Positions 29,977-45,962 of a stretch of DNA of 64,000 nucleotides are shown piece after piece; positions within the stretch are counted from its first letter, which is position 1, and every line of letters starts with the position of its first letter. Location: positions 62,001-126,000 of the IMG/VR virus record IMGVR_UViG_3300047994_000374; one strand, 5' to 3'. The notes under the pieces were generated by a model. It was given only the letters and a program-made list of their open reading frames with translations. It did no database searches and was not told the origin of the DNA. The position numbers were made by a program, and so were the translations under genes.

Positions 29977-30000
29977 CTTAAAACCAATCAACTCAAAATA

Positions 30001-30033
30001 CTACTACTACTACTACTACTATTATTATTATTA
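30001..30033 (-). repeat. (CTA)7(TTA)4 microsatellite, reading as TAAx4 TAGx7 in frame with the upstream CDS
   Basis: Read directly from the sequence. Confidence 0.9.
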
Positions 30034-30360
30034 AAGAAAAGCATCCATACTAATAACCCTCTTTAAAAGCTTTAACCCTTCCTCTGGATCATATTGTTTA
30101 TTCTCTTCTTTATAAACCAAATTATAGAGCTTATAAACAACTATCTCACTTACGCCCTTATACTCCCAATAAATTACTTCCCAACGAACCTTTATTTTAT
30201 TATCCTCTTTATCCTCAATAACAATGTTAATTTCAAACTTATCACTATATTTATCTGCATAGGGATAATAGTAAAAAGCATGGGTTTTATTTTTATGAAC
30301 CCCTATACATTTCATCTCCCTTACTTCTACTGAATACTTACCACACACTGGACATTTCAT
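30031..30360 (-). CDS. Zn-finger/xxFL array protein
   Basis: MKCPVC...C...H; ends MDAFL. Confidence 0.8.
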   Translation of the reverse strand: MKCPVCGKYSVEVREMKCIGVHKNKTHAFYYYPYADKYSDKFEINIVIEDKEDNKIKVRWEVIYWEYKGVSEIVVYKLYNLVYKEENKQYDPEEGLKLLKRVISMDAFL

Positions 30361-30612
30361 TTGATTTATACCTGGTTATTCTTTCTATATTGGGGCTTAA
30401 ATAAATCGACAATGGGAGTGAAAATAAATAGAGAAATCTACTAATAAAGTTGGATATTTTTGATTAATATTTGTGTTATTATTTGATTGTTTTAAAGCCT
30501 ATTTATTATATTTATTTGGCGGGAATTAGAAAAATAAGCTTACTTTGATGTTTGGGTCCGAAAGGCGAAAACATTATGAGCCGATTTAAAAAGACAAAGT
30601 TGGATATAGGGC

Positions 30613-30924
30613 TCAAATAAACCCCTGCAACCTAACCACACGATTCAACAGAATGTATGCTTCTTTGGGTGTATAGAATTTTTTGTCATGATAGAGCGTT
30701 CTCCCCGCATGAAGCACATCAATTTGTGTCGCATAAGTGTTTATTCTTTTTGGCTCGCTGTCAAAAGAATAAGAAGTTAACATTTGAAACTGAACGATAC
30801 CGCTGCTATTTTCTAAATGATAACGAATCCACATTGAATCTCCAACGCGTTCAAAATAATATGGAGCATGTCGACATATTTTATTATCCATAACCACCGC
30901 TTGATCGCAAATTGGACAATTCAT
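30613..30924 (-). CDS. Zn-finger/xxFL array protein
   Basis: MNCPIC; ends LQGFI. Confidence 0.8.
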   Translation of the reverse strand: MNCPICDQAVVMDNKICRHAPYYFERVGDSMWIRYHLENSSGIVQFQMLTSYSFDSEPKRINTYATQIDVLHAGRTLYHDKKFYTPKEAYILLNRVVRLQGFI

Positions 30925-31265
30925 AAAAAGGACCTTAATTTATCCACCTTAGATAAGAGCTGAATAGCCTCTTCATGGGCATATACATTGGCATCAGTAT
31001 AAATAATCTCCTGCCCATCAATAACTCGATCATCCAGAAGATAAATGATACTTACCCACCCGGAACTACTATCTATTCGGTTGGACTTTAATGGATGAGC
31101 CCCTGCTTCGAACCTATATTTATTATTTGAGCCGGCATTTTCAAAAAACCAAATGGTATATCCGAGTTCCAAATAATCATAGAAAAGATGCGATGGACCT
31201 GCTTCCTCACATCGCCAGCCCGAGTAAGTCTTGAAGCACGGATCATAACAAATTGGGCAGTTCAT
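30921..31265 (-). CDS. Zn-finger/xxFL array protein
   Basis: MNCPIC; ends LRSFL. Confidence 0.8.
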   Translation of the reverse strand: MNCPICYDPCFKTYSGWRCEEAGPSHLFYDYLELGYTIWFFENAGSNNKYRFEAGAHPLKSNRIDSSSGWVSIIYLLDDRVIDGQEIIYTDANVYAHEEAIQLLSKVDKLRSFL

Positions 31266-31297
31266 AAGAAAATCTGTAATTTAATCATTATTGTTAT

Positions 31298-31603
31298 TTA
31301 TGTGAAGCTATGCAATTTAATAAAACGATTCAGAAGTATTAACGCTTGAACCGGATCCCTTTTATTTCCTTGGTCTTCATAAATAAGTGTTTTAACTCCG
31401 AGGGAAAGATCACTACTACATTCTATTTTTGTCCTTGAATAAGGGGGAATGGGAACATCAATTGTGATAATGCTGTTATTCCCAATGATTTTAGAAATTA
31501 CAAAAGAATAACTGTAAAGATAAAATCCTCCGTCATCATGAAGGCAAGTCTTATGCCTTGTTATTATTTTTAAGCAAAACGGGCATATCATCGGCGGATT
31601 CAT
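31298..31603 (-). CDS. Zn-finger/xxFL array protein
   Basis: CPFC; ends LHSFT. Confidence 0.8.
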   Translation of the reverse strand: MNPPMICPFCLKIITRHKTCLHDDGGFYLYSYSFVISKIIGNNSIITIDVPIPPYSRTKIECSSDLSLGVKTLIYEDQGNKRDPVQALILLNRFIKLHSFT

Positions 31604-31923
31604 AGGAGCGCCTGCATCTTCATAAATCTCTTTAAAAGAGCAAAGCTTTCGGGAACACTATGGTGACAATTATCTTTATAAATCCAATCGGACCCAGCTT
31701 TATTCTTAATTCTAGTTCCATTGAATTCGCACTCAAGCCTCCAATAATGTTCTCGCGACGATTCTATAGACTTTTGAAAGAACAAAAATACTTGAATGGA
31801 ATAATAAGTTGAATTACAACTTTTATAAAGGTCTGTTCTATGATTATATTCTATGGTTTGTCCCTGGCAAATACTTCCTATGCTTTTTTTCTCCATCTCT
31901 TTACCACAAACAGGACAGTTCAT
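31600..31923 (-). CDS. Zn-finger/xxFL array protein
   Basis: MNCPVC; ends MQALL. Confidence 0.8.
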   Translation of the reverse strand: MNCPVCGKEMEKKSIGSICQGQTIEYNHRTDLYKSCNSTYYSIQVFLFFQKSIESSREHYWRLECEFNGTRIKNKAGSDWIYKDNCHHSVPESFALLKRFMKMQALL

Positions 31924-32246
31924 AGGAACGCCTTTATATTTATGAGCTTATAAATAAATGGGAGAAGCGCGGCATCTGCTTCTCGAAACCTATCTTCTTC
32001 ATAGATTGTTTTCCCTACAGTAAATCTATCATTATTATCGAAGGGCGGCATTAACTGACTTAAGTAGCCTCCAGAGCCGCGAGGATCGCACCAACTATGC
32101 CATCTTACGTTTTCTTTAAGGATGGCGAGCGTGAATTCAACGAGCCCGTGTTGGAAAAGATGATCCTGCTCATGGCAATGAAAACGTGTAACAATTTTCG
32201 ATTTGCTTTCGTTTTTTAGGATTTTATTACAGAAGGGACAGTTCAT
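31920..32246 (-). CDS. Zn-finger/xxFL array protein
   Basis: MNCPFC; ends IKAFL. Confidence 0.8.
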   Translation of the reverse strand: MNCPFCNKILKNESKSKIVTRFHCHEQDHLFQHGLVEFTLAILKENVRWHSWCDPRGSGGYLSQLMPPFDNNDRFTVGKTIYEEDRFREADAALLPFIYKLINIKAFL

Positions 32247-32316
32247 TTGGGGAATGGGTGGCGGAGATTTAAAATGGGTTGGGGGTGGAATAATTATGGT
32301 GATGATGCTGTAAAAT

Positions 32317-32634
32317 TTATAAGAAAGCTTGCAAGGTAGTAGTAAGTTTTTTTAAGATTTCCATTGCCTTATAACAATCATAATAAGAATCGTTCGCCTG
32401 AAATACAATTGTATGATCGGATTTATAAGTTCCTATATGAAAACGAAAAGCTCCAGAATCATAAATGTCCATGAAAATTTTATATGCGTTGGGCAAGTAA
32501 ATTGAATAGGTCGTGTCATTATAAAAATAAAAATTATGCCCTTTATTGATATTTTTTATACACATATATTTAGCGGCTGTCCCGATAATATTTTGTTTAG
32601 CAATTAATAGTTTATTGCAGACCGGGCAATTCAT
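32317..32634 (-). CDS. Zn-finger/xxFL array protein
   Basis: MNCPVC; ends LQAFL. Confidence 0.8.
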   Translation of the reverse strand: MNCPVCNKLLIAKQNIIGTAAKYMCIKNINKGHNFYFYNDTTYSIYLPNAYKIFMDIYDSGAFRFHIGTYKSDHTIVFQANDSYYDCYKAMEILKKLTTTLQAFL

Positions 32635-32942
32635 AAGAAAGCTCCAAGCTTTTTTACTCGTTTTATAAAGTCATAAGACTGTTGGTATGGAACATGATCT
32701 TGGCTGTTAAAAACAAGATTTCCGTCGGCCATAACTTGTGTGGATTCCCGGGTAAATGACCACTTTTCTATTTTATTAATAGGTCTATAAAAAATAATAC
32801 GATAAGAATTGGGCTCGTCGGATGAAACAAATGTGGGCCAAATTGTAACATCATGTCCAGTAATACCACCACTGTAATTTAAACATCGAATGATTAATGG
32901 ATCATATGCTAATTTTTGATTGCAAATAATACACTTATTCAT
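32631..32942 (-). CDS. Zn-finger/xxFL array protein
   Basis: CIIC; ends LGAFL. Confidence 0.8.
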   Translation of the reverse strand: MNKCIICNQKLAYDPLIIRCLNYSGGITGHDVTIWPTFVSSDEPNSYRIIFYRPINKIEKWSFTRESTQVMADGNLVFNSQDHVPYQQSYDFIKRVKKLGAFL

Positions 32943-33214
32943 AAAAATCCTTTTAATTTTGCAAAACGATCAATGTAGGACATGATTTGATCAAGTGGAA
33001 TGAAATCGTTCTTTATTGTAATTATTTCGGAACTGTTATCCCCGTAGGACATCTTTGTGTCAGATTTATAATCGGATGTAATAAAATAACAACCACATAA
33101 TCTCAAATCATAGCCCTCTGGATCCATATAAACTGTGTGATTAAACACATTCCATCTACAAATAAAAAATTCTTCTTCTTTAATTAAAGGTTTATAACAG
33201 ATTGGGCAATTCAT
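32939..33214 (-). CDS. Zn-finger/xxFL array protein
   Basis: MNCPIC; ends LKGFL. Confidence 0.8.
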   Translation of the reverse strand: MNCPICYKPLIKEEEFFICRWNVFNHTVYMDPEGYDLRLCGCYFITSDYKSDTKMSYGDNSSEIITIKNDFIPLDQIMSYIDRFAKLKGFL

Positions 33215-33537
33215 AAGAAAGCCCTTAACTTCATCATCCTCTCAACAAATGCCATGGAATCTGTTAATGGAACAAACATATTAAAATCTTGATGTGTTGT
33301 GCATTGTCCAATGTTATATGTAAACGATGTATATCCTGATGGGTGATTGTTATCTTTGAATGAGTAAAATGAAATGGAGTTTGAAATACCTGTCGATTTC
33401 TGAGTTTGAATAATGTAATCATCCTCTTGATAATAAGTAAAAAAATGTCGAATGGGACCGCCCTCACAACGAGTGGTTTTCAATCGATCGGTCATTAGCG
33501 GGAGGTGGCAAACGGGACAATTTATTTGCTTGCTCAT
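33211..33537 (-). CDS. Zn-finger/xxFL array protein
   Basis: CPVC; ends LRAFL. Confidence 0.8.
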   Translation of the reverse strand: MSKQINCPVCHLPLMTDRLKTTRCEGGPIRHFFTYYQEDDYIIQTQKSTGISNSISFYSFKDNNHPSGYTSFTYNIGQCTTHQDFNMFVPLTDSMAFVERMMKLRAFL

Positions 33538-33845
33538 AGAAATCCTTGCAATTTGATAATTCTTTCAAATAATTTCATACCTTCTTGAATATCATAATTG
33601 ACGTCAGTTTTATAAATTTGATCCAACCACCAGTCAGCGGCTTCGTCCTTAATATAAATTATAGTTGGCATATTTATTGGTCTTGGAGGATTAGGGGCAA
33701 TGGAAATAAATCGATATCCCTTTTGCTCAATGGAATAGGAGTGATCATTAAATATCTCAAAACAATGGTCATTTCGAAAGCATTGAAATATTCGATGCAA
33801 ATCAAAAGTATTATTATTTCCTGAATTACATACAGGACACTTCAT
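33534..33845 (-). CDS. Zn-finger/xxFL array protein
   Basis: MKCPVC; ends LQGFL. Confidence 0.8.
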   Translation of the reverse strand: MKCPVCNSGNNNTFDLHRIFQCFRNDHCFEIFNDHSYSIEQKGYRFISIAPNPPRPINMPTIIYIKDEAADWWLDQIYKTDVNYDIQEGMKLFERIIKLQGFL

Positions 33846-34150
33846 AGGAAGGATTGCAATTTCGCCATACGCTTGAGAAGGGTATGGGCTTCTTTAAGAG
33901 AACGCAATTGGTTATCCGTATAAATCGTTTTGGGGCGATTTCCATTCAGAGTATAGGTATATATCTCTGTTCGAATCGATTCTTCCTTTATTAGCTTTGT
34001 ATGCCCTGAAATCATAGTTAGTGTTGCATGGTCTCTTAAAATATAAAAGTGATCGGAATAATAACATGTGGAATGATCAGAATTATAGCATGTCCACTTG
34101 GTTTCGGTAAGTCGTTGTACGAGATTTTTATTGCAAAATGGACAGTTCAT
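33842..34150 (-). CDS. Zn-finger/xxFL array protein
   Basis: MNCPFC; ends LQSFL. Confidence 0.8.
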   Translation of the reverse strand: MNCPFCNKNLVQRLTETKWTCYNSDHSTCYYSDHFYILRDHATLTMISGHTKLIKEESIRTEIYTYTLNGNRPKTIYTDNQLRSLKEAHTLLKRMAKLQSFL

Positions 34151-34162
34151 TGGGCTTATCGT

Positions 34163-34571
34163 TCATAGGAACCCTTTTATGTTATTTATTCTATTCAAGA
34201 AATCATTTACTTCTTCGGGTGGAGTATATTTTTTGACACTAACTATTTCATATTTCATATTTCATATAATATTTATTTTTATCTTCATTTTCACCATAAA
34301 CTTTTGTTATTGGACCATTATAGTTAATATATTTTGGATTATCAAAAGATACTATTCCGACGGAACTGTAAATTTTAAATGTTTTGCGAGTTGGCCATAA
34401 ATTATAATATCTAATATTTTTATCTAAATTCATCCAAACTTCAAAAAGATGCTCGCTCACATTGGAAAGATGTGGAAATAATAATCTATCTTTTTGGGCA
34501 AAAGAACAGGAGAGAAATCTTGCAGGATCTCCTTTTGTTTCATGCTTACAAATGGGACAAAGTATTTTCAT
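34163..34571 (-). pseudogene. Zn-finger/xxFL array member with frameshift
   Basis: CPIC start; the family C-terminus ...NRINNIKGFL* (stop 34163-34165) lies in another frame. Confidence 0.65.
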
Positions 34572-34852
34572 AGAAAGCTTCTTAATTTCATGAACCGTTC
34601 AATATGGGACTTGATTTCAGTAATGGGAATAAATTCTTTTGTATAAATAGGATCGGTTCCAGGATTGTGATATACATCGACGTTATAAAATGACGTAATT
34701 GGGATATCAGCATTTTTATCAAAAGCATCAATTGTAAGAATAATACTTTCAATTATAATTCGATAACCATCCTTATAAACTTCAACGTCATGTCCGTTTG
34801 TTTGATGGATATTTTTCTTATTAAATTTTTGATTGCAAATAGGACATTTCAT
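34568..34852 (-). CDS. Zn-finger/xxFL array protein
   Basis: MKCPIC; ends LRSFL. Confidence 0.8.
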   Translation of the reverse strand: MKCPICNQKFNKKNIHQTNGHDVEVYKDGYRIIIESIILTIDAFDKNADIPITSFYNVDVYHNPGTDPIYTKEFIPITEIKSHIERFMKLRSFL

Positions 34853-35160
34853 AAGAGCGCTTTCATATTGATTAATCGTTTAAGAAGAATATACCCGTCT
34901 TTAGGATGAGGAGTGTTATCATCTTGGTAAATAAGATTCTTTTCATCATAAACATATGTATTTTGACTGGCTTCACTAATAACGGTTTCAAACTTATATT
35001 GATGAGCGGTATATGGAACTTTGCCAGATTCTTCCTTAAAAAGCCAAATGGTATAGCCTAACCCTTCATAATCGATAAACAAATGATCATCAGTGGAGTG
35101 ACATTTAAATTGAATACTGGAATCCGAAGTGCTTTGATTGCATACCGGACAGAACATCAT
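34849..35160 (-). CDS. Zn-finger/xxFL array protein
   Basis: CPVC; ends MKALL. Confidence 0.8.
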   Translation of the reverse strand: MMFCPVCNQSTSDSSIQFKCHSTDDHLFIDYEGLGYTIWLFKEESGKVPYTAHQYKFETVISEASQNTYVYDEKNLIYQDDNTPHPKDGYILLKRLINMKALL

Positions 35161-35537
35161 AAGAAAGCCTGCAATTTCATAATTCCTTTAAATCGCTCTA
35201 TTGTTTCTTTATTTAATTTTTGAAAGGGTAATTCGCACACAAACTCACGCTCGTAACCAAACAAAAGTCCCCAACCACTATCATCATCCAATAATTTACT
35301 TACTTTAATACAGTTTTCTTTTTTATTCCCTTCAAAACGAAACATTTCTTTTTCATAAAACTCCACCGTATAATCATCTTCTTGATGGAGCGTAACAGCC
35401 GATTGAAGCGCATCGTATGGGACTGCTGTTGAAAATTCCTTCCAATAACGAATAGAGTGTGATTTATTTTTATCACACTCCACGCTATCTTCGAACAATG
35501 AAACTTGTAGAGGCGCATTGCATATAGGACAATTCAT
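35157..35537 (-). CDS. Zn-finger/xxFL array protein
   Basis: MNCPIC; ends LQAFL. Confidence 0.8.
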   Translation of the reverse strand: MNCPICNAPLQVSLFEDSVECDKNKSHSIRYWKEFSTAVPYDALQSAVTLHQEDDYTVEFYEKEMFRFEGNKKENCIKVSKLLDDDSGWGLLFGYEREFVCELPFQKLNKETIERFKGIMKLQAFL

Positions 35538-35848
35538 AGAAAAGTTCTTAATTTAATTATCCTTTTAAGAAATTTAACGGCATTATCATCAGGTGGCATA
35601 TAAACTTTACCCTCATAAACTAATGAAGTTATAGAAAGCTCTGGCGTATGAATTTCTGTAGCTTGTCGCGCGGATGATTTATAAGAATAAAGAATATATC
35701 TAATATTATTTTCAAATAATCTAATTTCATATCCAGTCTGGTCTTGATATTTATAAGAAAATGGTTGAAATTGATGACCATCCGCTATACAATTATCATA
35801 AGGATAAAGTGCCGCTTTTTGGCAAATGGGACATGCAGCATAACTCAT
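35534..35848 (-). CDS. Zn-finger/xxFL array protein
   Basis: CPIC; ends LRTFL. Confidence 0.8.
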   Translation of the reverse strand: MSYAACPICQKAALYPYDNCIADGHQFQPFSYKYQDQTGYEIRLFENNIRYILYSYKSSARQATEIHTPELSITSLVYEGKVYMPPDDNAVKFLKRIIKLRTFL

Positions 35849-36160
35849 AAGAATGCCTTAAGATTTAAAATTTTATAAACGAATGGCATAAGCGTATGAT
35901 CGGGGGGGTCTTGAGATGGCGTCTGTATAAAAGTGACCCCAATCAATAGCTGATGACTCTCCATGATTCACCCCCGTTTCTATTGTGAATTTGCCGTGAT
36001 CTGATCGAATATAAATCTTTAGACCGTTTTCTTTATTTTTGATATAAACCACATAATCATATAGACGATCTATTGGAGGGCTATAAAATGCATGCTCATC
36101 TTCAATAAAACAAGTATCTTGCTCTTTTATAATTTTTTTACGGCAGACTGGGCATTTCAT
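35845..36160 (-). pseudogene. Zn-finger/xxFL array member frameshifted near a C7 tract
   Basis: MKCPVC; ...YKILNLKAFL* in a shifted frame; G7 at 35902-35908 on plus. Confidence 0.65.
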
Positions 36161-36483
36161 AAAAAAGCCCTTATGTTATATAATTTCTGAATGATGTTTG
36201 GTAAATTTTCATCCCAAGGTAGTGGTTCGGACTCATGAATTAATTTTTTGTTGGCTTGAGAGTATCTTATTTTGTGATAGATTTCTGTTTTTTGATTATG
36301 TCCGTATTTACCAATAATAAGATAATCACTAAATTTCAAATTGACTTGATATTTCTCAATGCGTTTGTCATAGGGATCAAGTTGAATGAATGTAGTATGA
36401 TCATTTTTAATGCATTGAAAATAAGAAGATCGATTTGTGGCTCGATATTCTGGCAATTCAATTTGACAAACAATACATTTCAT
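36157..36483 (-). CDS. Zn-finger/xxFL array protein
   Basis: MKCIVC; ends IRAFL. Confidence 0.8.
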   Translation of the reverse strand: MKCIVCQIELPEYRATNRSSYFQCIKNDHTTFIQLDPYDKRIEKYQVNLKFSDYLIIGKYGHNQKTEIYHKIRYSQANKKLIHESEPLPWDENLPNIIQKLYNIRAFL

Positions 36484-36761
36484 AAGAATGCTTTCAATTT
36501 TAAATATTTTTCAATGTGTGGCTTTATCTCTTCAATTGGAATGAATGGCGTTTCTTTAAAAGCCTTTACACTTGTGCTATTACCATTGTGAAAAGAGACT
36601 CTTGACAGCCCTTCTACTTTTGAAGTATAGGCATCCATTACCAATAAATTTGAAATACATAAACGATATCCATTGCCAAATACCGTAAAGCAATGTTCTG
36701 CATCTTTACATTCATCGTATCTTGGATACTCAAATTCTTTATCACAATAGGGGCACTTCAT
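36480..36761 (-). CDS. Zn-finger/xxFL array protein
   Basis: MKCPYC; ends LKAFL. Confidence 0.8.
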   Translation of the reverse strand: MKCPYCDKEFEYPRYDECKDAEHCFTVFGNGYRLCISNLLVMDAYTSKVEGLSRVSFHNGNSTSVKAFKETPFIPIEEIKPHIEKYLKLKAFL

Positions 36762-37066
36762 AAGAATGCCTTTATTCCAATCATTTTTCTAATAAATACA
36801 GGAGCTTGTTCAGTCGTAATTTCTTTTAATTGAGAACTTCTTGCGTCCCATCCTATTATAATTTTTCCATTATAACTACTTGGAAATGTTGCAGCATCAT
36901 GCTCACTTAGAATAATACTATATGGAAAGTAATGGTCCAATACATATTGTTTGTTATCAATCGAAAGCATTAATTTATAATTTTGAAGTCCGTAATAAGC
37001 AAAATTATGATCGCTTTGATGACATATAAAATTACCATCATTTGCATTACATTCTGGGCAATTCAT
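36758..37066 (-). CDS. Zn-finger/xxFL array protein
   Basis: MNCPEC; ends IKAFL. Confidence 0.8.
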   Translation of the reverse strand: MNCPECNANDGNFICHQSDHNFAYYGLQNYKLMLSIDNKQYVLDHYFPYSIILSEHDAATFPSSYNGKIIIGWDARSSQLKEITTEQAPVFIRKMIGIKAFL

Positions 37067-37371
37067 AGGAAGGCGGCAATCTTTGTTAGTTTGTCCGTTA
37101 ATCTTGGTAAATCACGAATGGGCACCATATAACTATTATAAATCAAATTTTCATTTTCATCTCTCACTTCTAAATAATTCTTAACTTGATTGGCGGTAAT
37201 ACGAAAAATAATATTGTAAGAATTATCAAGTTTTTTGAATGTATAGGATCCATCCTCCCAAACATAAAATTCATGCCCCTTTCCACTGCAGTTATGGATT
37301 GATATTTGTTTATTGTTACCTATAGTCGATAGCCCTTCAGACATAAGTCCATTACAAAATACGCAGTTCAT
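37063..37371 (-). CDS. Zn-finger/xxFL array protein
   Basis: MNCVFC; ends IAAFL. Confidence 0.8.
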   Translation of the reverse strand: MNCVFCNGLMSEGLSTIGNNKQISIHNCSGKGHEFYVWEDGSYTFKKLDNSYNIIFRITANQVKNYLEVRDENENLIYNSYMVPIRDLPRLTDKLTKIAAFL

Positions 37372-37604
37372 AAAAATGCCCCTAACTTTTTAAGTCGCTT
37401 GATAAATTGATAAGATTTTTGATAAGGTATTACAATGCTATATTTTTCAATTAATTGTGTAAAAAGATATGGTTCTTCACTATAAGAAGTATAATGTGCA
37501 ACATATTTATCTGTAAAATCCCATATATCAAGATTAGTGATCCTTGTTTTATTGTAGAATTTAAATGAGAAACACGTGCCATCGTATCCGTCTAATTTAG
37601 CCAT
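37368..37604 (-). CDS. 5'-truncated array member lacking the Zn finger
   Basis: Ends PYQKSYQFIKRLKKLGAFL, similar to 32631-32942. Confidence 0.6.
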   Translation of the reverse strand: MAKLDGYDGTCFSFKFYNKTRITNLDIWDFTDKYVAHYTSYSEEPYLFTQLIEKYSIVIPYQKSYQFIKRLKKLGAFL

Positions 37605-37718
37605 AAATATATTCTTTTATCATGTTTTATATTTAACTCTGTCGACTTTAATGCACTTTTATAATAACAACTGCTTTAGCTCTTGACAAGAGGCAAAAGA
37701 TTATTAAATTCAATATAA

Positions 37719-38183
37719 ATGATCCGTTCGACTAAACATTATTTTCAAAACATTAACTCAGGAAAACTTCAAGTTGTTTCTGAGTTCTTGTCGGCATATC
37801 GTTTAGCGACTCAGAACTATATTGATTATATTTGGACATCTACTTTTAAGGATGGGTATGGAGAAACTTGTTTCGACATACCCAATGATAAACTTAATCT
37901 TCCTAAATATTTAAACTATCAAGCTATTACTTTTCCTACTGAACTTTCTGCAAGGGCTTTATCTTCAAGTTTAATGCAAGCTATCGGAATAGTCAAAGGC
38001 GTTTTAGCATTTCGAAAGAAGACTTTATGGATCATTGAGAAGCGAAAGTCCGAAGGGCTTTCGACAGCTTATTGGGAAAGAAAACTCAAGCCCGTCTTTA
38101 AGCCCACATTAAATAATGCTTTTCAAGCAGAACTTTCCTCCAAGAATATTGATTTTCAAGAGGGCAAGAGTTTTGATTTATAA
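37719..38183 (+). mobile_element. Truncated IS200/IS605-family TnpB-like ORF (N-terminal part only)
   Basis: Opposite strand inside the array; MIRSTKH...LSARAL...QAIGIVK resembles phage TnpB N-termini; no RuvC or Zn-ribbon part; flanking array genes are damaged. Confidence 0.5.
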
Positions 38184-38451
38184 ATAATTCGCTTGACCTT
38201 TATAAAATTCCATTTGATTTCAGACATTTAAAGTTGAACGTAAAGGGCTTCTTCTGGAAAGAAGAAGGACTTTATGATTTAAATGGTGAGGAGCTTATAG
38301 TCCCTCATACTAAACAAAATGAATAATATAAAAAGATATGTTATTCATAACTCTAATTCTACAGTATGACGGGCATTAGAGCGGTCGCACTTCCAATCAA
38401 TTTTTGTTCTTGTCATTTCATGTTCGCAAACAATACAACGAGGATTATGTT

Positions 38452-38871
38452 TCATAAAAATGCCTTTAATATTTTTAATCGTTCATAGGTTTGCATGGCG
38501 TATTCTAACAAATTAATTTCAGACCAAATGGGAAATTTCCAAGGAACGCGATCTAAATCCTTTAAAAAGAAAGCGGACCCTCCAAGATGCTTTGTAATTG
38601 CAAATGATGTGATGGTTTCTTTTATTTTATCTGATAAATGATACCTAAAAGATAAATACTTATTGGTTTTTGGAACGGCGATGTGAATGACTGCGCTTGA
38701 AACACGATCTCGACTCTGCCATGGTATTGCGTATTCTACCCTCACTTTATAGGCAGATGTGTTATTGTCAATCATACAATTGGCACAAAATGCAAATGAA
38801 GATATATAATTTTTTGTTAATTTAAGGGGTCCATTACAAAAAATACAGGGCTTTGTTAAAAATATATCCAT
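38452..38871 (-). CDS. Zn-finger/xxFL family protein
   Basis: CIFC...CANC; ends LKAFL. Confidence 0.75.
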   Translation of the reverse strand: MDIFLTKPCIFCNGPLKLTKNYISSFAFCANCMIDNNTSAYKVRVEYAIPWQSRDRVSSAVIHIAVPKTNKYLSFRYHLSDKIKETITSFAITKHLGGSAFFLKDLDRVPWKFPIWSEINLLEYAMQTYERLKILKAFL

Positions 38872-39003: not shown

Positions 39004-39687
39004 ATGGGCAAATTTTTAAGATTAATAGGGCTTTTCATGGTAGTATGTTTGGCTTCAGGGTGCGGCACTTCACTTTACAGCTATCGACAAGGTTCAGTCC
39101 CTGCTCATGTTAATCATCCTCGAAACATTGCAATTTGGCTTGATGCCCGTTTTACTCCTGCCCAAGATAAAGAGTTAGAAGATGCAATTGATGAATGGAA
39201 CGGTGTATTTAATGGTCAAATCATACTCAAGCTTCAAACGAAAGATGCCTATTATACGGATGAAAAAGGTAAATTACACGCTATCAAAGAGCTTGTAACT
39301 TTTCGAACCACTGAAGAAGCAAAAGATTTAATTACAAATAGCGAAAAATCTGACTTGGGATGGGTTATTATGGACATCCCAGATGATGATCCAATGCTTC
39401 AAGGCTCTGATGTTGAAGGTGTTTTGGCTTTCGTGCCAGGATTTAATGAGCACTATGGCGTTTTTCTAATGGAGCATTTTGGTGACCGATCTCTACGTGA
39501 CGTGGCTCTTCATGAATTTGGACATCTTTTAGGGGCGCCACATATTAGCGCGCCTTCTTTAATGAACCCAACATACGGGTATAATCAACTTACATGTATT
39601 GATAAGGTTACGGTTCTTGAAGTAGCTAATTATTGGCACATCGATCCATCTACTTTAAATTATTGTTCAACGCCATTTTACCCATAA
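39004..39687 (+). CDS. Lipoprotein metzincin (matrixin-like) metalloprotease
   Basis: Lipobox LASGC; HEFGHLLGAPH plus LMNP; GAGG upstream. Confidence 0.85.
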   Translation: MGKFLRLIGLFMVVCLASGCGTSLYSYRQGSVPAHVNHPRNIAIWLDARFTPAQDKELEDAIDEWNGVFNGQIILKLQTKDAYYTDEKGKLHAIKELVTFRTTEEAKDLITNSEKSDLGWVIMDIPDDDPMLQGSDVEGVLAFVPGFNEHYGVFLMEHFGDRSLRDVALHEFGHLLGAPHISAPSLMNPTYGYNQLTCIDKVTVLEVANYWHIDPSTLNYCSTPFYP

Positions 39688-39688
39688 C

Positions 39689-40297
39689 ATGAAGAAATCT
39701 TTTATATTTATATGCTTCTTATTTGTTATAAGTGCATTTGGATGTGGTGCTCAACCTCCCGGCTACTATTGGGCTGTCACTACTCCCGCGAACAATGTGG
39801 GAAGAGTTATTCCTATTTGGGTTGATAACAATTTTAGCGAGCAAGATAAACTTACACTATCTGACGCTATCAATCAATGGAATTATGTTCTTAATGGTCA
39901 AATCACTTTAGACATTGTTGATACGCACTTTGATATGGAAGATAATAAAATCAAAGAGGCGGGCAACAAAGGTGGGTGGCTATTCTTAAAGATTGATCAT
40001 AACAATCCATTCATACCCTCAACCGGTCCAGATTTGGTTACACTGGCTTTTGCTGATCAAATCGGGGGACATACCATATTTTTTGTTCAGGATGTTATGG
40101 GTCAAAATAGACTGCCTGGGGTGGCGCTTCATGAGATCGGACATTTACTGGGAGCAGAGCATGATAGCAGTGGATTGATGTTCCCACGTTATTCGGCTCA
40201 TGGATTCTCTTGTGTGGATGAATTGGCAATGAAAGAGGTGGCAGAGTTCTTTCATTTGGATGCTTCAAGAATGAATTATTGCGTTAACCTTCAATAA
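39689..40297 (+). CDS. Lipoprotein metzincin metalloprotease, tandem paralog
   Basis: Lipobox AFGC; HEIGHLLGAEH plus LMFP. Confidence 0.85.
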   Translation: MKKSFIFICFLFVISAFGCGAQPPGYYWAVTTPANNVGRVIPIWVDNNFSEQDKLTLSDAINQWNYVLNGQITLDIVDTHFDMEDNKIKEAGNKGGWLFLKIDHNNPFIPSTGPDLVTLAFADQIGGHTIFFVQDVMGQNRLPGVALHEIGHLLGAEHDSSGLMFPRYSAHGFSCVDELAMKEVAEFFHLDASRMNYCVNLQ

Positions 40298-40659
40298 AAA
40301 TTAATAAGTTTTTCTAAACGATCTTGATGAGCCTTTGCTTCTGTCATCCAGTTATTCGGATTTGCAGATAGCGGCATATAATCTTTAACTCTAATAAGTT
40401 CTTCCAAAGTCATTGCATTTAAAATGGTTGAATGGCGCACATAAACTAATGGTCCAGAAGAATCATCACCCATATCAGATAGAAAATTATATTTGTTATT
40501 CATAAGGCGATAAAAAAACGGCAAGCCATTTTCATTAACCATAAATGTTGATCCGTTATATTCACATCCCCAATTGTGTGTAAATATCATTCGATCAAAA
40601 TTTATTTTTTTATTTAAAGCCATACTGCATGACGGACAAATAATATCGAAATCAATCAT
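40291..40659 (-). CDS. Zn-finger/xxF family protein
   Basis: CPSC; ends LINFY. Confidence 0.7.
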   Translation of the reverse strand: MIDFDIICPSCSMALNKKINFDRMIFTHNWGCEYNGSTFMVNENGLPFFYRLMNNKYNFLSDMGDDSSGPLVYVRHSTILNAMTLEELIRVKDYMPLSANPNNWMTEAKAHQDRLEKLINFY

Positions 40660-41015
40660 AAAAATGTCAATAGTATTTCTAATTTAGATTTAATATTTTG
40701 AGGCGTCATAGTGTATCTAACATCTTCAAATCGTTTTAGTAATTGCAAATCCTTATTAATCTGAACGCCTGGAATACCCGGAATCTTAACTTCATACAAA
40801 TGTACGACATCTCCTAAAAGTTTTGACCAACGATACATTTTATTATGAATGGAGATGTAAAGCGATACGACGGCAGGTTTACTTTGATTGCGGAAAAATA
40901 CATATTCCGCTTGATATGGATCGCAAAAATAAACCCTCGCATTATACGTGTCCATTTCTGGGAGCGGTTTATATTCAGCATTTTCTTCACAAAACTTACA
41001 TGGAGCTATCATCAT
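40656..41015 (-). CDS. Zn-finger/xxF family protein
   Basis: CKFC; ends LLTFL. Confidence 0.75.
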   Translation of the reverse strand: MMIAPCKFCEENAEYKPLPEMDTYNARVYFCDPYQAEYVFFRNQSKPAVVSLYISIHNKMYRWSKLLGDVVHLYEVKIPGIPGVQINKDLQLLKRFEDVRYTMTPQNIKSKLEILLTFL

Positions 41016-41401
41016 GAGAAGGCGATAAGTATATTTACCTTCCTTTTGAGTTCTTCTAATATTGGGAAGTCTGGGGAAATCATTTTAGGTAAATCAATGT
41101 ATTGTGGCGGTCCATGAGGTTCCAAAATAATGATACGAGACTTATTATTTACATAATCAATTTCGATAAATTTATTATGAGTAGTATCGCTTTTATTTAT
41201 GGAAATTTTTATCATATCAATTTTATTAGTGGCGCTATCAATAAGCAAATGAATATAATGATCTTCTTCTGAAATACAACCCCTATCAATATAATCTGAC
41301 ATCTTTTTAATTAGATAAACATAACGAGTAAATGGTCTATAGCTTTTTAATCGGCTGGAACAAATAGGGCAAAACAAACAATCATCCATCCCTTTATACA
41401 A
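41012..41401 (-). CDS. Zn-finger/xxF family protein
   Basis: CPIC...C...DH; ends LIAFS. Confidence 0.75.
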   Translation of the reverse strand: MYKGMDDCLFCPICSSRLKSYRPFTRYVYLIKKMSDYIDRGCISEEDHYIHLLIDSATNKIDMIKISINKSDTTHNKFIEIDYVNNKSRIIILEPHGPPQYIDLPKMISPDFPILEELKRKVNILIAFS

Positions 41402-41402
41402 A

Positions 41403-41741
41403 TTAAGAGAAGGTTATTAATTTATTAAGCTTATTTAAGAACTTCTTGTAGTCTTTTAATCTTTCAGTAGTTACTTCGATATATGGTAAAACAACATGAT
41501 TACTCGGCTCAAGTAATAATAATGTTTTAAACTCTGTATCAAATTGAAAAACGCGCTTGGGATTATTCGAATGCAAATTAACCACAGTGACATGTTTATT
41601 GTTGGTATGTGAGACGCACTCAAACACATGATCGAGACGCAAATTGCATGTTTGCGTTAATAGCTCTGACCCATCAATAAACTCCATAAAATCATTGACA
41701 AGCGGGGAATTACAGCAGGGGCAATTTATTGGTGTTCTCAA
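41403..41741 (-). CDS. Zn-finger/xxF family protein
   Basis: CPCC...C...DH; ends LITFS. Confidence 0.75.
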   Translation of the reverse strand: MRTPINCPCCNSPLVNDFMEFIDGSELLTQTCNLRLDHVFECVSHTNNKHVTVVNLHSNNPKRVFQFDTEFKTLLLLEPSNHVVLPYIEVTTERLKDYKKFLNKLNKLITFS

Positions 41742-41750
41742 CCAGTTCCT

Positions 41751-42422
41751 TCAAGAGAATAACAAAATCTTTCGAAGCTTATCTACGAGAGTTTGTTTGC
41801 TCTTAAAGCTATATAACGGAAGAATTGAGAGTTCGATTTTCGTTGGGGCGAGAGGGCTTGTTTTATCAATGCGATCGGCAAATAGGATGGATTTATTGGT
41901 ATTGAAGTCCGTCTCAATTTGATAGAGAGTTGTGCTGTCGTTTATTAAAAGGCGCTCGGATTTTAAAGCAATTAACTCTATGATGCCTTTATTGAAGTTA
42001 AATTTTAAAGGATGAGTTGATATCTCGCAACAACAATAATGACAATAAGAACGAAGAGTTAAATATTTTTCATTGCCTTGTAGATATTTTTTTAAGAAGT
42101 CTTCATTGTTGGTGCGTATTTTTTGAGTTAGATAATTGACTTCTAAATAAATAAATTCTGAATAGCCCATTTTAAGCTCAAAGGAAACCTCATTGGGAGT
42201 TGAGGTACCGGAACGGGAATGGACAGGGATACCAAAGGAATTGCGATAGTTTAGATCAATACTAACACTGCGCTGACAATTAAAGCAGGGGTTATTATAG
42301 GAGACGAAATCTTTAATTGTGAAGGATTTGGGCACATAGAAATGCCAGTTTAAGAGTGCCAAAAATAATTTTGATATAAATGACGATTTTTTGGGGCAGC
42401 GAGTGGGCAGCGGATTACTCAA
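41751..42422 (-). CDS. Long Zn-finger/xxF family protein
   Basis: CFNC...CHYC; ends ILLFS. Confidence 0.7.
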   Translation of the reverse strand: MSNPLPTRCPKKSSFISKLFLALLNWHFYVPKSFTIKDFVSYNNPCFNCQRSVSIDLNYRNSFGIPVHSRSGTSTPNEVSFELKMGYSEFIYLEVNYLTQKIRTNNEDFLKKYLQGNEKYLTLRSYCHYCCCEISTHPLKFNFNKGIIELIALKSERLLINDSTTLYQIETDFNTNKSILFADRIDKTSPLAPTKIELSILPLYSFKSKQTLVDKLRKILLFS

Positions 42423-43779: not shown

Positions 43780-44859
43780 TTAATTGACGTGTTTCCAAGT
43801 CCTGCCAGATATAACATCCATTATAGTTACTTTCGACACTCCAAATATTTTTGCCATTTCTTTTGCTGTTTTACCTTCAGAATCTAATTCTCTTATTTGC
43901 TTAACAGATTCTTCATTCAATATTTTACTTGGATCTTTTCGTTTTTCAAAAATCATATCAGGAAATATATGTTTCCATGTTTTGCTATTTTGGATATCAT
44001 ATATGGTAGTTTCTGATACTTGATATAATTCGGCAAGTTTAGACGTTGATTGTAAATCTTCATGCAACGCTAATTTTATTTCAATAACCTTATCTTCATT
44101 TAAAAAATCTATATTGTGTCGTCTTTGTTTTGGAATTATTTCATTTGGCAAAATATGCGTCCACATTCGTCCTGTACGAATATCATTAATAGTTTTGCGA
44201 TGAACGCCATATTGCTTTCCTATTTCTGTATCTGACAAATCTGTATTAATAAAAAGTCTTTTTATTTCAGTAACTTTCTCTTCATTTAATTTGGCTTGTG
44301 GATTTTTACTTCCAGTTTTATTTTCTTTATCTTTTTCTTTTGCACTATCTGGTCTCACTTTTCCTCTTCCCGCCTTACTTAAAGCTTTACAATGTTCTGG
44401 ACTTAATATTTTACCCATATGCGCTTCACTTAATGAAGCTTTGTGTTCCTCTGATTTTGGAACACCACTTGATGCCATACTCATTTTTAATTTAGACTCT
44501 TCTGAATGTAAATGCCCGCACGCGCCTTCACCTCCATCAGTTAAATTATACCCATATCTATCTCCGTATTTACATATATTTGATTTATATTCTTTTATCC
44601 AAAACTGCTCTCTATCGAGGATGATAAGTTCATCTTTATTAGATTCTAAAATTTTAAATTCGAAATTGTTTAACCCATATTTATTAATGGCTTTGTGCAC
44701 AACAAATGAATTTTTATCAATTATACGGGATTGTCTTTTATGACTGTTCCATCGAGATTTTGGATTATTTGTTTTCCCAATATACACCTTGTTGTTTAAT
44801 AAGTTCTTAATTATATAGATATAAAACATTGACGATCCTTTTCGATCGTCATATATCAA
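43780..44859 (-). CDS. GIY-YIG homing endonuclease with NUMOD3 and HTH repeats
   Basis: YIYIIKN...VYIGKT...R...H; GYNLTDGGEG; HSEESKLKMS repeats; three C-terminal HTH-like repeats. Confidence 0.9.
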   Translation of the reverse strand: MIYDDRKGSSMFYIYIIKNLLNNKVYIGKTNNPKSRWNSHKRQSRIIDKNSFVVHKAINKYGLNNFEFKILESNKDELIILDREQFWIKEYKSNICKYGDRYGYNLTDGGEGACGHLHSEESKLKMSMASSGVPKSEEHKASLSEAHMGKILSPEHCKALSKAGRGKVRPDSAKEKDKENKTGSKNPQAKLNEEKVTEIKRLFINTDLSDTEIGKQYGVHRKTINDIRTGRMWTHILPNEIIPKQRRHNIDFLNEDKVIEIKLALHEDLQSTSKLAELYQVSETTIYDIQNSKTWKHIFPDMIFEKRKDPSKILNEESVKQIRELDSEGKTAKEMAKIFGVSKVTIMDVISGRTWKHVN

Positions 44860-44873
44860 GAGAAATTAAATAT

Positions 44874-45962
44874 TTACGCTGACTTGATTTTTCTTAGCAT
44901 TGCTATTAAAAATTCCTGAACATCTCCATCAAGAACCTTATGAAAATCTCTCACAGTATAATCTGTGCGATGGTCTTTTACTATTTGTTGCGGCTCAAGG
45001 AAGTACGACCGTATTTGTGCACCAAATGATGCGCTTGATTGAACGGATAATTTGGCGTCAATCAACTCTTGTTTCTTTTTCATCTCAATATCATAAAGTT
45101 TTGACTTCAACATTTTAAGAGCATTTGCTTTATTTTGATGATAATCCCTCTCTGCACTTACGATAAAACTAATGCCAGAGGGAAAGTGTTTTATTCTACA
45201 TGCCGACGCGACGCGATTTTGATTCTGACCCCCAGAACCTGTACGAGTTTGTCCAATCATTTCAACATCTTTGTCGTCAATCTTAATGTCAATTGTATCT
45301 TCAATATCCGCAGAAACTTGGACCGCAGCGAAGCTTGTTTGCCTTGCATTACCTGCATTGAAGGGGCTATTGCGGATTAACCTCATTACGCCATTTTCAC
45401 CCTTCAAAAATCCATAAGCATACTTCCCCTCGATTCGTATTGACACATTATCAATACAAATCGAACTATGCTCTTCACTATCTTTACGATCCAACAACTC
45501 TACCTTAAACCCTTGAGCAGCAGCATATCGACAATACATTCGATACAGCATACTTACCCAATTACATGCTTCCGCCCCACCCGCTCCAGCACTTATAGTC
45601 AAAATAGCAGGAGCATCATCAGTTGGCTCACAAAGCATCAACTCAAATTCAATCGTCTCCATTCGCCCCAGAATGCCTTTTAACACGCTTTCAATCTCAC
45701 CCTCACTGCCTTCTCCCTCTGAAAGCAAAAGCTCGTTAAAAGCTATTGTATCCCTAAACTCAAGCATCCCTGCAACGAGACCTGCCAGCTTCTCTCGTTC
45801 CTTCATTAATGGGATAGCTTTCGCTGAGTTATGCCAGAAATCAATCTTCTCTGCCGCAGCATCAATTTCCTCAATACGACGCTGATGAAATGTAACTGGA
45901 ATGAGCTTCTCCAGAACGATCATTTTCTCTTGGCATTGTTCTAATAATTGATGTGCGCTCAT
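44874..45962 (-). CDS. prfB: Peptide chain release factor 2
   Basis: GAGG.EA..W..ML.RMY; SPF specificity tripeptide; GGQ; QIRSY. Confidence 0.92.
   Translation of the reverse strand: MSAHQLLEQCQEKMIVLEKLIPVTFHQRRIEEIDAAAEKIDFWHNSAKAIPLMKEREKLAGLVAGMLEFRDTIAFNELLLSEGEGSEGEIESVLKGILGRMETIEFELMLCEPTDDAPAILTISAGAGGAEACNWVSMLYRMYCRYAAAQGFKVELLDRKDSEEHSSICIDNVSIRIEGKYAYGFLKGENGVMRLIRNSPFNAGNARQTSFAAVQVSADIEDTIDIKIDDKDVEMIGQTRTGSGGQNQNRVASACRIKHFPSGISFIVSAERDYHQNKANALKMLKSKLYDIEMKKKQELIDAKLSVQSSASFGAQIRSYFLEPQQIVKDHRTDYTVRDFHKVLDGDVQEFLIAMLRKIKSA

What the first reader, a model, noticed from the sequence alone, without database searches (positions are those of the whole stretch)
30031..38871. Tandem array of about 24 hypervariable CCCH zinc-finger genes with fixed ends
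Seen: 23 consecutive ~100-aa minus-strand genes (30031-37604) plus 38452. Nearly all begin M-N/K-C-P-x-C with a later C...H, have a beta-rich-looking middle with little mutual identity, and end in an amphipathic helix K/N-L/I/M-x-A/S/G-F-L*. Most are chained by ATGA overlaps, so the junction DNA (about GCNTTYYTATGAAYTGYCC) is itself a repeat that encodes both the end of one gene and the start of the next. Inference: a diversified adaptor or effector library (variable middle for target recognition, constant tail for docking on one shared partner), expanded by recombination at the junctions and translationally coupled. An anti-defence or host-range repertoire is one possibility. I do not recognise a named family.
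Basis: partly seen in the sequence, partly recalled or inferred. Interest (0 to 1): 0.85.

Follow-up and report, generated by a model that had tools for sequence, protein, structure and literature searches.

The report
Zinc-ribbon gene array in huge phages
A 394-kb uncultivated phage from a moss metagenome carries about 30 chained genes for small zinc-binding proteins of an unnamed family that recurs as 10-30-gene arrays in other large uncultivated phages and gains and loses whole genes quickly, most likely a repertoire of binders aimed at host proteins.

Summary
There are 23 consecutive minus-strand genes at 30031-37604 plus one at 38452-38871, and 17 of 22 junctions are ATGA overlaps. The family also extends outside the given coordinates. 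Six or seven more divergent members (40291-42422, 47764-48090, and weakly 45972-46574) flank a phage release-factor-2 gene.

No Pfam, NCBIfam, PHROG, PADLOC, PDB or BFVD relative was found. The only similarity is a sub-threshold match of the N-terminus to the CCCH zinc ribbon of RlmA. An AlphaFold2 model (pLDDT 85) shows a zinc ribbon, a six-strand beta meander and a C-terminal helix.

About 170 members were found in ten phage lineages (two contigs of about 447 kb, one of 99 kb, the rest short; soil, moss, other environmental and marine samples). Seventy-one percent are ATGA-chained. None was found in 185,579 bacterial genomes.

The conserved ends are selected at the protein level. A close relative differs by whole-gene insertions and deletions whose breakpoints lie on the junctions. 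Two genes in the window are frameshifted and one is split by a 754-bp mobile insertion. dN/dS is about 0.4, against 0.04 for the neighbouring peptidase.

The genes are old, diverged paralogs and are not hypervariable. The most likely function is a co-expressed library of host-directed binders. The idea that the tail docks on one shared partner remains untested.

The parts
30031..37604 (-). 23 chained type-A family genes: 30031-30360, 30613-30924, 30921-31265, 31298-31603, 31600-31923, 31920-32246, 32317-32634, 32631-32942, 32939-33214, 33211-33537, 33534-33845, 33842-34150, 34248-34571, 34568-34852, 34849-35160, 35157-35537, 35534-35848, 35873-36160, 36157-36483, 36480-36761, 36758-37066, 37063-37371, 37368-37604
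   Evidence: ORFs and overlaps. All score against the family HMM with E from 6e-20 to 2e-4. Alignment is A1.
34151..34571 (-). Frameshifted member. The ORF 34248-34571 ends early, and the canonical tail (..NRINNIKGFL*) is readable in another frame at 34151-34247.
   Evidence: Three-frame translation compared with the intact 130-aa ortholog L014:2003-2395. A related strain (run X7) lacks 7 nt at 34243. dN/dS is 0.80.
35849..36160 (-). Frameshifted member. The ORF 35873-36160 ends early, and the tail (..YKILNLKAFL*) is readable in another frame.
   Evidence: compared with the intact 104-aa ortholog L014:418-732. Run X7 lacks 1 nt at 35903.
37598..38351 (.). 754-bp mobile insertion that splits a family gene. 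It is flanked by a 7-bp direct duplication TCTAATT (37591-37597 and 38352-38358) and carries a 154-aa ORF at 37719-38183 (+) with no detectable homolog.
   Evidence: The uninterrupted ortholog is L003:1562-1882. Assembly graph breaks and roughly double word depth (77-107 against 40) over 37700-38350 in the source run indicate further copies elsewhere. There is no second copy in the window and no hit in Pfam, PHROGs or phage records.
38352..38455 (-). N-terminal fragment (MKHNPRCIVCEHEM..) of the gene whose C-terminal part is 37368-37604. It is ATGA-chained to 38452-38871.
   Evidence: Translation, compared with the ortholog P0006.
38452..38871 (-). First type-A gene of the array (139 aa, tail ..LKILKAFL)
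   Evidence: The ortholog L003:1149-1565 is 77% identical.
39004..40297 (+). Two M10-like (HExxHxxGxxH) lipoprotein metallopeptidase genes, 39004-39687 and 39689-40297, lying in opposite orientation inside the family cluster. The second converges on, and overlaps, the end of family gene 40291-40659.
   Evidence: Pfam Peptidase_M10, E 2.6e-6. The same convergent arrangement beside arrays is seen in L031 (39% identity) and L049 (40% identity), and the genes also flank the array in the close relative L003.
40291..42422 (-). Five divergent type-B family genes: 40291-40659, 40656-41015, 41012-41401, 41403-41741 and 41751-42422. Tails are ..LINFY, ..LLTFL, ..LIAFS, ..LITFS and ..ILLFS.
   Evidence: An AlphaFold2 model of 41403-41741 has the same order of elements, at pLDDT 66. 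41751-42422 matches the gene that follows RF2 in L012 (E 4e-9).
43780..44859 (-). GIY-YIG homing endonuclease inserted between the RF2 gene and the family genes
   Evidence: Pfam GIY-YIG 6.9e-14 and PHROG homing endonuclease 6.9e-35. It is absent at this position in L012.
44874..45962 (-). Phage release factor 2 (PCRF and RF-1 domains, SPF and GGQ motifs) embedded in the family cluster
   Evidence: Pfam hits. It is 48% identical to the RF2 in L012, which is ATGA-chained to a family member.
45972..46574 (-). 200-aa family-like protein (CPVC near the N-terminus, tail ..ILTTFG) directly upstream of RF2. Membership is weak.
   Evidence: HMM E 0.078.
47764..48090 (-). Outlying type-B member (108 aa, tail ..QMMRTFS)
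   Evidence: HMM E 3.7e-4.

Best explanation
This is a multigene family specific to large uncultivated phages. It encodes small cytoplasmic zinc-ribbon proteins as one co-oriented, translationally chained operon. Each protein has three parts. The first is an N-terminal CCCH zinc ribbon of the RlmA type. The second is a six-strand antiparallel beta meander that varies in sequence and loop length. The third is a conserved basic amphipathic C-terminal helix that ends hydrophobic-F-x-COOH with no extension.

Shown by the data: the family, the predicted fold, the chaining, protein-level selection on both ends, and birth-and-death evolution. The evidence for birth-and-death is whole-gene indels at junction microhomology, frameshift decay, a transposon hit, mostly lineage-specific expansions, and non-synonymous change about ten times faster than in the neighbouring gene, while still under purifying selection.

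Inferred: the roughly 30 paralogs are made together from one mRNA by termination at UGA and restart at the overlapping AUG, helped by the phage's own RF2 gene in the same cluster. They act as a repertoire of non-enzymatic binders. The zinc ribbon and helix form a constant scaffold, and possibly a common docking surface. The variable sheet face and loops recognise different host (or competitor) targets, for host takeover or counter-defence.
For: The array and its overlaps are real. An HMM finds 87 relatives of the same length and full-length match among 1.84 billion representative proteins. About 170 members occur in 10 lineages, in arrays of 5-30 genes, and 120 are ATGA-linked.

The AlphaFold2 model has pLDDT 85 and pTM 0.74: zinc ribbon, 6 strands and a helix at residues 85-99. 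A type-B member modelled from an independent alignment gives the same order of elements at lower confidence. No conserved polar residues exist apart from the Zn ligands and the basic tail residues, which argues for a binder and against an enzyme.

The ends are under protein-level selection. At the conserved tail positions all four GCN codons, TTT/TTC at 10:10 and five Arg codons are used. Non-overlapped genes and the last gene of the array keep the canonical ends.

Gene-unit indels against the relative have breakpoints that overlap 5-10 nt at junctions. dN/dS is 0.11-0.80 (pooled about 0.4), against 0.04 for the flanking peptidase.

The family is absent from 185,579 bacterial species genomes: 13 single pattern hits, all without an HMM match. 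It is also absent from deposited phage records and plasmids. The surrounding genes are accessory and DNA-metabolism genes with homing endonucleases.
Against: There are no expression, interaction or phenotype data. No RNA run holding the locus was found. No similarity to any known anti-defence or host-takeover protein was detected. Pooled dN/dS is below 1, and the middle (0.44) is barely higher than the N-terminus (0.40), so an arms race is not demonstrated. The conserved ends could be purely structural. The recurrent RF2 and M10-peptidase neighbours are not explained by this model. Promoter and terminator scans were uninformative.
Confidence: 0.45

Rival explanations
1. The proteins are independent small inhibitors or regulators with no shared partner. 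The zinc ribbon and C-terminal helix are conserved only because they hold the fold together, and the Phe at position -2 is a core residue.
For: AlphaFold2 packs the helix on the sheet with block pLDDT of 89-92. The tail shows helical hydrophobic periodicity. In the type-B model the helix runs to residue 111 of 112. The positions of basic residues differ between the type-A and type-B tails.
Against: No member of about 170 has any C-terminal extension beyond F-x, including the 49 that are not constrained by an overlap. Basic residues at -9, -6 and -4 are conserved in type A (78, 68 and 73 of 82; the -6 count includes Asn). I infer, without coordinates, that they lie on the solvent side of an amphipathic helix. 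In the confident model the last three residues lie outside the helix and have lower pLDDT.
Confidence: 0.2
2. The proteins are directed at nucleic acid or the ribosome. The RlmA-type zinc ribbon and the basic helix bind RNA or DNA, and the array modulates translation or transcription together with the co-encoded RF2.
For: The only sequence similarity is to the rRNA methyltransferase RlmA zinc ribbon (PDB 1p91, E 0.046; 11 of 82 members sub-threshold to PF21302). The tail is basic (median pI 9.5). An RF2 gene is embedded in the cluster in two lineages that share 48% RF2 identity, and in L012 it is ATGA-chained to a member.
Against: Whole-protein pI ranges from 4.7 to 9.7 and many members are acidic. 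RF2 is not near the arrays in L054 or L031. It is hard to see why a single nucleic-acid target would need 30 divergent paralogs. The RlmA matches are all below the gathering score.
Confidence: 0.12
3. The constant C-terminus is a degron or a protease, clamp or hub docking peptide. On this reading the array is an adaptor library that brings different targets to one host machine, or a set of deliberately short-lived proteins.
For: The tail has an invariant Phe at -2, a free C-terminus always one residue later, and preceding basic residues. From general knowledge, and not tested here, C-terminal hydrophobic peptides are used by SspB (ClpX docking), ssrA-type degrons and beta-clamp partners.
Against: No sequence match to any of these motifs beyond 2-3 residues. 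The helix is predicted to be part of the globular fold.
Confidence: 0.12
4. The proteins are packaged internal or ejection proteins. On this reading the constant ends target the proteins into the capsid, and they are injected with the DNA, as with the internal proteins of T4-like phages.
For: This is analogy only: diverse bodies with a constant terminal signal, and tandem arrangement in a plastic region. In L054 the array directly follows a 1276-aa fibre-like gene.
Against: In the window the array lies among early-type and nucleotide-metabolism genes on the strand of the small-gene block. No protease cleavage motif or capsid genes lie nearby.
Confidence: 0.06
5. The termini are conserved only because of DNA or translation constraints at the overlapping junction, and the proteins themselves are otherwise unconstrained.
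For: Residue 2 (N, K or I) is dictated by ATGA. Codon -4 ends in G twice as often as background (38% against 19%), which gives an SD-like AGG in about 30% of linked junctions.
Against: Synonymous codons vary freely at the conserved residues. Unlinked genes and terminal genes keep the motifs. dN/dS is below 1 across the genes. The fold prediction is confident. Exact DNA identity shared between junctions has a median of only 7 nt.
Confidence: 0.03

Closest known systems
N-terminal zinc ribbon of rRNA methyltransferase RlmA (Pfam PF21302, PDB 1p91)
   Same: A Cys-x2-Cys ... Cys-x3-6-His ligand pattern at the extreme N-terminus. It is the best, and only recurrent, sequence similarity.
   Different: All matches are below Pfam's gathering score. 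There is no methyltransferase domain, and the rest of the protein (beta meander plus C-terminal helix) has no counterpart.
Internal proteins of T4-like phages in hyperplastic regions (from general knowledge)
   Same: Tandem, rapidly turning-over small phage genes with a constant terminal signal and diverse bodies. At least one is a counter-defence protein.
   Different: T4 internal proteins have an N-terminal capsid-targeting peptide that is cleaved off, number only a few genes, and have no zinc ribbon, no conserved C-terminus and no ATGA chain. Packaging was not tested here.
Multigene families of large eukaryotic DNA viruses (poxvirus ankyrin/PRANC proteins, ASFV MGF110/360/505; 'genomic accordions'; from general knowledge)
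   Same: Tens of tandem paralogs in a giant viral genome, copy number changing by unequal recombination, and in poxviruses a variable binding part plus a constant C-terminal docking module.
   Different: The proteins, hosts and machinery are unrelated. Here the units are about 100 aa, are chained by 4-nt overlaps in one operon, and the docking role of the tail is unproven.
Lar restriction-alleviation protein (Pfam PF14354) and MqsA/YgiT-type zinc-ribbon antitoxin domains
   Same: Small proteins that begin M-x-C-P-x-C with a zinc ribbon. They act by binding a host restriction system or toxin.
   Different: Lar gave only one weak hit (E 0.012, 16 bits against a cut-off of 28.6). No MqsA-family hit appeared in any member at E up to 0.1. 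Lengths and C-terminal parts differ.

Membership tests
Zn_ribbon_RlmA (PF21302) | Profile match at or above the Pfam gathering score (27 bits) | tested here: not met
   Best member E 0.0016. Eleven of 82 members match below threshold. The family profile against PDB gives 1p91 at E 0.046.
Zn_ribbon_RlmA (PF21302) | Cys-Cys-Cys-His ligand set with C-x2-C, a spacer, then C-x3-H | tested here: met
   C3 and C6 are invariant, and C21 and H26 are at least 90% conserved in 82 sequences. Spacings are C-x2-C-x7-23-C-x1-9-H. Zinc binding itself was not measured.
Lar_restr_allev (PF14354) | Profile match at or above the gathering score (28.6 bits) | tested here: not met
   Only 38452-38871 matched, at 16.3 bits and E 0.012. 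It is not among the most frequently matched Pfam families in the 82-member scan.
Diversity-generating (DGR-type) hypervariable genes | A near-identical template and variable repeat pair | tested here: not met
   Self-comparison of 30000-38900 against the window finds only one 41-nt junction match at 85%. Orthologs are 72-90% identical along their whole length. A reverse transcriptase was not searched for.
Known anti-phage defence or candidate system proteins (PADLOC-DB) | Profile match | tested here: not met
   Six different models were each hit by a single member, with best E 1e-4, and none was consistent across members.
Any PHROG, NCBIfam or solved or predicted viral structure | Significant sequence or fold match | tested here: not met
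   PHROGs gave 0 hits. NCBIfam gave 1 stray hit. Foldseek against PDB and BFVD gave no match with E at or below 1e-3. ESM Atlas scores were at most 0.83.
T4-type internal proteins | Presence in the virion, and an N-terminal targeting peptide removed by the prohead protease | not testable with these tools
   No proteomics is available. The N-terminus here is a zinc knuckle.
C-terminal docking or degron peptides (ClpX-binding, ssrA-like, beta-clamp-binding) | Binding of the free C-terminal peptide to the partner | not testable with these tools
   Only the motif could be described. No complex prediction or assay was available.

The most novel reading that the evidence does not exclude
The invariant C-terminus (basic helix, then A/hydrophobic-F-x-COOH) is a portable docking signal. 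On this reading the array is a phage-encoded adaptor library. About 30 different recognition surfaces, made in fixed proportion from one chained mRNA, would each deliver a different host protein to one shared machine such as a protease, a clamp or the ribosome. This would be a bacterial-virus counterpart of the poxvirus ankyrin/F-box repertoires. The co-encoded RF2 would secure the UGA-dependent termination and restart that the chain relies on.
Probability: 0.15. Interest if true: 0.9.

Novelty: new variant of a known kind. Interest (0 to 1): 0.7.

Why it matters
Large uncultivated phages are full of unexplained small genes. Here a single uncharacterised family fills about 9-12 kb of a 394-kb genome, and it recurs in phages from soil, moss, other environmental and marine samples. 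It has a confidently predicted fold with no known relative and an unusually regular architecture.

If the proteins are a binder or adaptor repertoire, they would be a new source of host-targeting or counter-defence modules. They would also be a bacterial-virus example of 'accordion' multigene families, and a compact natural scaffold with constant ends and a variable face. The chained UGA/AUG junctions next to a phage RF2 gene offer a natural system for studying termination-reinitiation.

Tried and rejected
- Alternative genetic code for the ORF-poor left 29 kb: recoding TAG, TGA or TAA gave no clear gain for TAG, and the region simply holds small genes. No in-frame stop was found in the fibre-like gene at the window end.
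- Megablast of the array against phage and plasmid records: no match.
- tblastn of two members and of the insertion ORF against phage records: no match.
- The search for related loci with alignment A1 failed because no conserved block was long enough. It was replaced by junction-pattern scans.
- Junction-pattern scan of bacterial genomes: 13 single hits, all chance, with none matching the HMM. L010 from IMG/VR was also a chance hit.
- Promoter and terminator scan: counts were no higher than in shuffled sequence.
- Literature searches found no description of the family.
- ESM Atlas feature and structure searches returned only generic zinc-ribbon or propeller-blade look-alikes.
- Search for RNA runs: none holding the locus was identified, so expression is unknown.
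- Shine-Dalgarno overlay in the tail codons: a modest enrichment only, which cannot explain the motif.
- DGR-type mutagenesis: rejected.

Full report
**Observation.** The ORF list for 29-40 kb and a script over the coordinates confirm 23 back-to-back minus-strand ORFs from 30031 to 37604 (78-126 aa) and a further one at 38452-38871 (139 aa). Seventeen of the 22 internal junctions are 4-nt ATGA overlaps. The degenerate junction pattern occurs 12 times, all in the array on the minus strand, against 0.06 expected from shuffles. In alignment A1 the paralogs share only about 20% identity. They keep an N-terminal C-P-x-C, a third Cys, a His, and a C-terminal [KR]-hydrophobic-hydrophobic-K-L-[KQR]-A-F-L stop.

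**Context.** The window comes from a 394,192-bp contig, which is listed in IMG/VR. The same sequence is held by moss-metagenome runs. Neighbouring genes show it is a very large phage:
- a release factor with PCRF and RF-1 domains and SPF and GGQ motifs;
- a GIY-YIG homing endonuclease;
- an intein-containing IMPDH, a DNA methyltransferase, ThyX and an RNase T-type exonuclease;
- a fibre-like protein and a DUF2786/DUF7168 protein.

G+C falls from about 0.42 left of 29.5 kb to about 0.33 over the array and beyond.

**The family is real, unnamed and wider than the finding.**
- Database hits. Pfam, PHROGs, NCBIfam and PADLOC give no family-level hit. The only recurrent similarity is sub-threshold, to the N-terminal CCCH zinc ribbon of RlmA: 11 of 82 members in Pfam, and PDB 1p91 at E 0.046 for the family profile.
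- Relatives. A profile search of 1.84 billion representative proteins found 87 hits. Nearly all are 86-127 aa, match full length and have the same two ends.
- Extra members in the window. An HMM scan of all window ORFs adds members outside the stated coordinates: 40291-40659, 40656-41015, 41012-41401, 41403-41741, 41751-42422 and 47764-48090, and weakly 45972-46574. These 'type-B' members end K-[IL]-K-x-hydrophobic-hydrophobic-x-F-[SL].
- Other phages. Junction-pattern scans and contig look-ups recovered arrays in at least nine further lineages. These include two contigs of about 447 kb (L012/L052 and L054, the latter carrying the GenBank 'hypothetical protein UFOVP1290_136'), a 99-kb contig with two arrays, and Tara Oceans contigs with 25% G+C.
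- Totals. In all there are about 170 members, of which 120 are ATGA-linked to the next gene.
- Absences. The same pattern in 185,579 bacterial and archaeal species genomes gave 13 single hits, none with an HMM match, as expected by chance. Two members gave no tblastn match in deposited phage genomes.

**Fold.** With the 82-sequence alignment A2, AlphaFold2 gives pLDDT 85 and pTM 0.74 for 33842-34150. The model has zinc-ribbon hairpins, six antiparallel strands and a helix at residues 85-99. The last three residues (A-F-L) lie outside the helix. Foldseek found nothing at E of 1e-3 or better in PDB or BFVD. The nearest rows were polo-box, PH-like and propeller fragments, and uncharacterised 'uncultured Caudovirales' proteins that may be family members. 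A type-B member modelled from a separate 39-sequence alignment shows the same order of elements, but with low confidence (pLDDT 66). A common fold is therefore supported for type A and plausible for type B.

**Are the fixed ends a DNA artefact?** Mostly not.
- Residue 2 (N, K or I) is dictated by ATGA, since codon 2 starts with A.
- At the conserved tail residues the codons vary freely: all four Ala codons, TTT/TTC at 10:10, five Arg codons, and TTA/CTA.
- Genes with an intergenic gap on either side, and the terminal gene 30031-30360, keep the canonical ends.
- The 49 unlinked members across lineages also end F-x.
- A weak Shine-Dalgarno overlay exists. Codon -4 ends in G in 38% of linked junctions against 19% background, and an AGG/GGA/GAG core is present in 30% of linked junctions. 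It cannot account for the motif.
- Exact identity between junctions is short (median 7 nt, maximum 19 nt).

**Evolution.** A related phage, assembled in pieces (L003, L014, L001 from one sample), has positional orthologs at 72-90% amino-acid identity. Differences in gene content are whole-gene units whose breakpoints overlap by 5-10 nt on the junction sequence:
- one gene is absent at window 36157/36167;
- six genes are absent at 34149/34153;
- one gene is absent at 30620/30629;
- a three-gene block is replaced by two other genes.

This supports recombination at the junction repeats, at the level of microhomology.

Two window genes are frameshifted while their orthologs are intact, and a related strain lacks 7 nt and 1 nt at the two sites. 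One gene is split by a 754-bp insertion with a 7-bp target duplication. That insertion shows doubled depth and graph breaks in the source run, so it is a repeated mobile element.

Nei-Gojobori dN/dS for 19 ortholog pairs is 0.11-0.80. Pooled values are 0.40 for the N-terminus, 0.44 for the middle and 0.23 for the tail, against 0.04 for the adjacent M10-like peptidase. The genes are therefore constrained but evolve much faster than their neighbour, and they are not hypervariable. The best non-orthologous match of a member lies in its own phage lineage in 97 cases and in another lineage in 45, so most of the expansion is lineage-specific. No template/variable repeat pair exists.

**Conserved neighbours.**
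- RF2. In the window and in the 447-kb phage L012/L052 the order is: type-B member, RF2, type-B members, type-A array. The RF2 proteins are 48% identical, and the gene after RF2 is homologous between the two (E 4e-9). In L012 the RF2 gene is itself ATGA-chained to a member. In the window a GIY-YIG endonuclease and other genes have been inserted after RF2.
- M10-like peptidase. An M10-like lipoprotein metallopeptidase converges on the end of a type-B member in three divergent lineages: the window, L031 and L049 (39-40% identity). It also flanks the array in the close relative.
- Stop codons. Family genes stop with TGA 24 times and TAA 7 times. TAG is almost unused in the window.

Neither neighbour is near the array in every lineage, and their link to the family is unexplained.

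**Interpretation.** The shown facts fit a co-expressed repertoire of small non-enzymatic binders on a constant zinc-ribbon and helix scaffold, evolving by birth and death, in the accessory part of very large phage genomes. I consider host takeover or counter-defence the most likely role (0.45), by analogy with other fast-turning-over viral multigene families. The analogy rests on general knowledge and is not a test. Whether the tail is a shared docking or degron signal is open.
- For a shared signal: the strict F-x-COOH end without extensions, the conserved basic residues and the unstructured last three residues.
- Against a shared signal: the confident packing of the helix in the model.

The rivals are nucleic-acid or ribosome binding, packaged proteins, and pure scaffold. 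They are listed with the experiments that would separate them. No expression data could be obtained.

Noticed in passing
window 37598-38351: A 754-bp insertion with a 7-bp TCTAATT target duplication and a 154-aa ORF (37719-38183, +) that has no homolog in Pfam, PHROGs or phage records. It shows about twice the depth of its flanks, and the assembly graph breaks at its ends in the source run, so more copies exist elsewhere. No terminal inverted repeat was obvious.
   Followed up: partly
window 44874-45962 (-); L012:1147-2226: A phage-encoded release factor 2 (SPF and GGQ motifs, no frameshift site) is embedded in the family cluster in two phage lineages. TAG is almost never used as a stop in the window (2 of 81 genes). 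No in-frame stop codons were seen, so there is no evidence of recoding within the window.
   Followed up: partly
window 3679-4320 (-), 27056-27643 (-), 39004-39687 (+), 39689-40297 (+); L031:4927-5673; L049:1761-2366: Four paralogous M10-like lipoprotein metallopeptidases lie in 64 kb. One converges on a family member, and the same arrangement occurs in two distant phage lineages.
   Followed up: partly
window about 29500: There is a sharp composition change. G+C is 0.40-0.44 with strongly negative GC skew in much of it (to about 22 kb) to the left (about 70 small minus-strand genes, including a DUF2786/DUF7168 protein at 16892-17623). It is 0.30-0.37 to the right.
   Followed up: no
window 56855-59041 (+): An IMP dehydrogenase / GMP reductase gene is interrupted by an intein (Hint and intein-splicing domains).
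   Followed up: no
window 43780-44859 (-), 48159-49505 (+): A GIY-YIG homing endonuclease lies at 43780-44859. At 48159-49505 there is a 448-aa protein with many CxxC pairs and a weak, sub-threshold C-terminal REase_MTES_1575 match.
   Followed up: no
window 5226-5651 and 6307-6582; 5777-6310 and 7278-7700: Judged by eye from the translations, there are two further pairs of small paralogous genes in the left block, with shared motifs such as ..VRLE.DP.. at the C-terminus.
   Followed up: no
window, 25 nt upstream of 40 non-family genes: Only 13 of 40 genes have a Shine-Dalgarno core. The upstream regions are A-rich, with A at -3 (23 of 40) and -6 (25 of 40). This pattern is reminiscent of hosts that make little use of Shine-Dalgarno pairing, such as Bacteroidota, and is only a weak host hint.
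   Followed up: partly
L054:12283-15400: In the 447-kb contig the array is followed by about 3 kb with no called genes and much higher G+C-looking ORF content. This could be an assembly chimera or a foreign insert.
   Followed up: no
L054:17996-19485: An AAA_33 (polynucleotide kinase-like) gene and a 2H-SAK (2H phosphoesterase-type) gene lie about 6 kb from the array in that phage.
   Followed up: no
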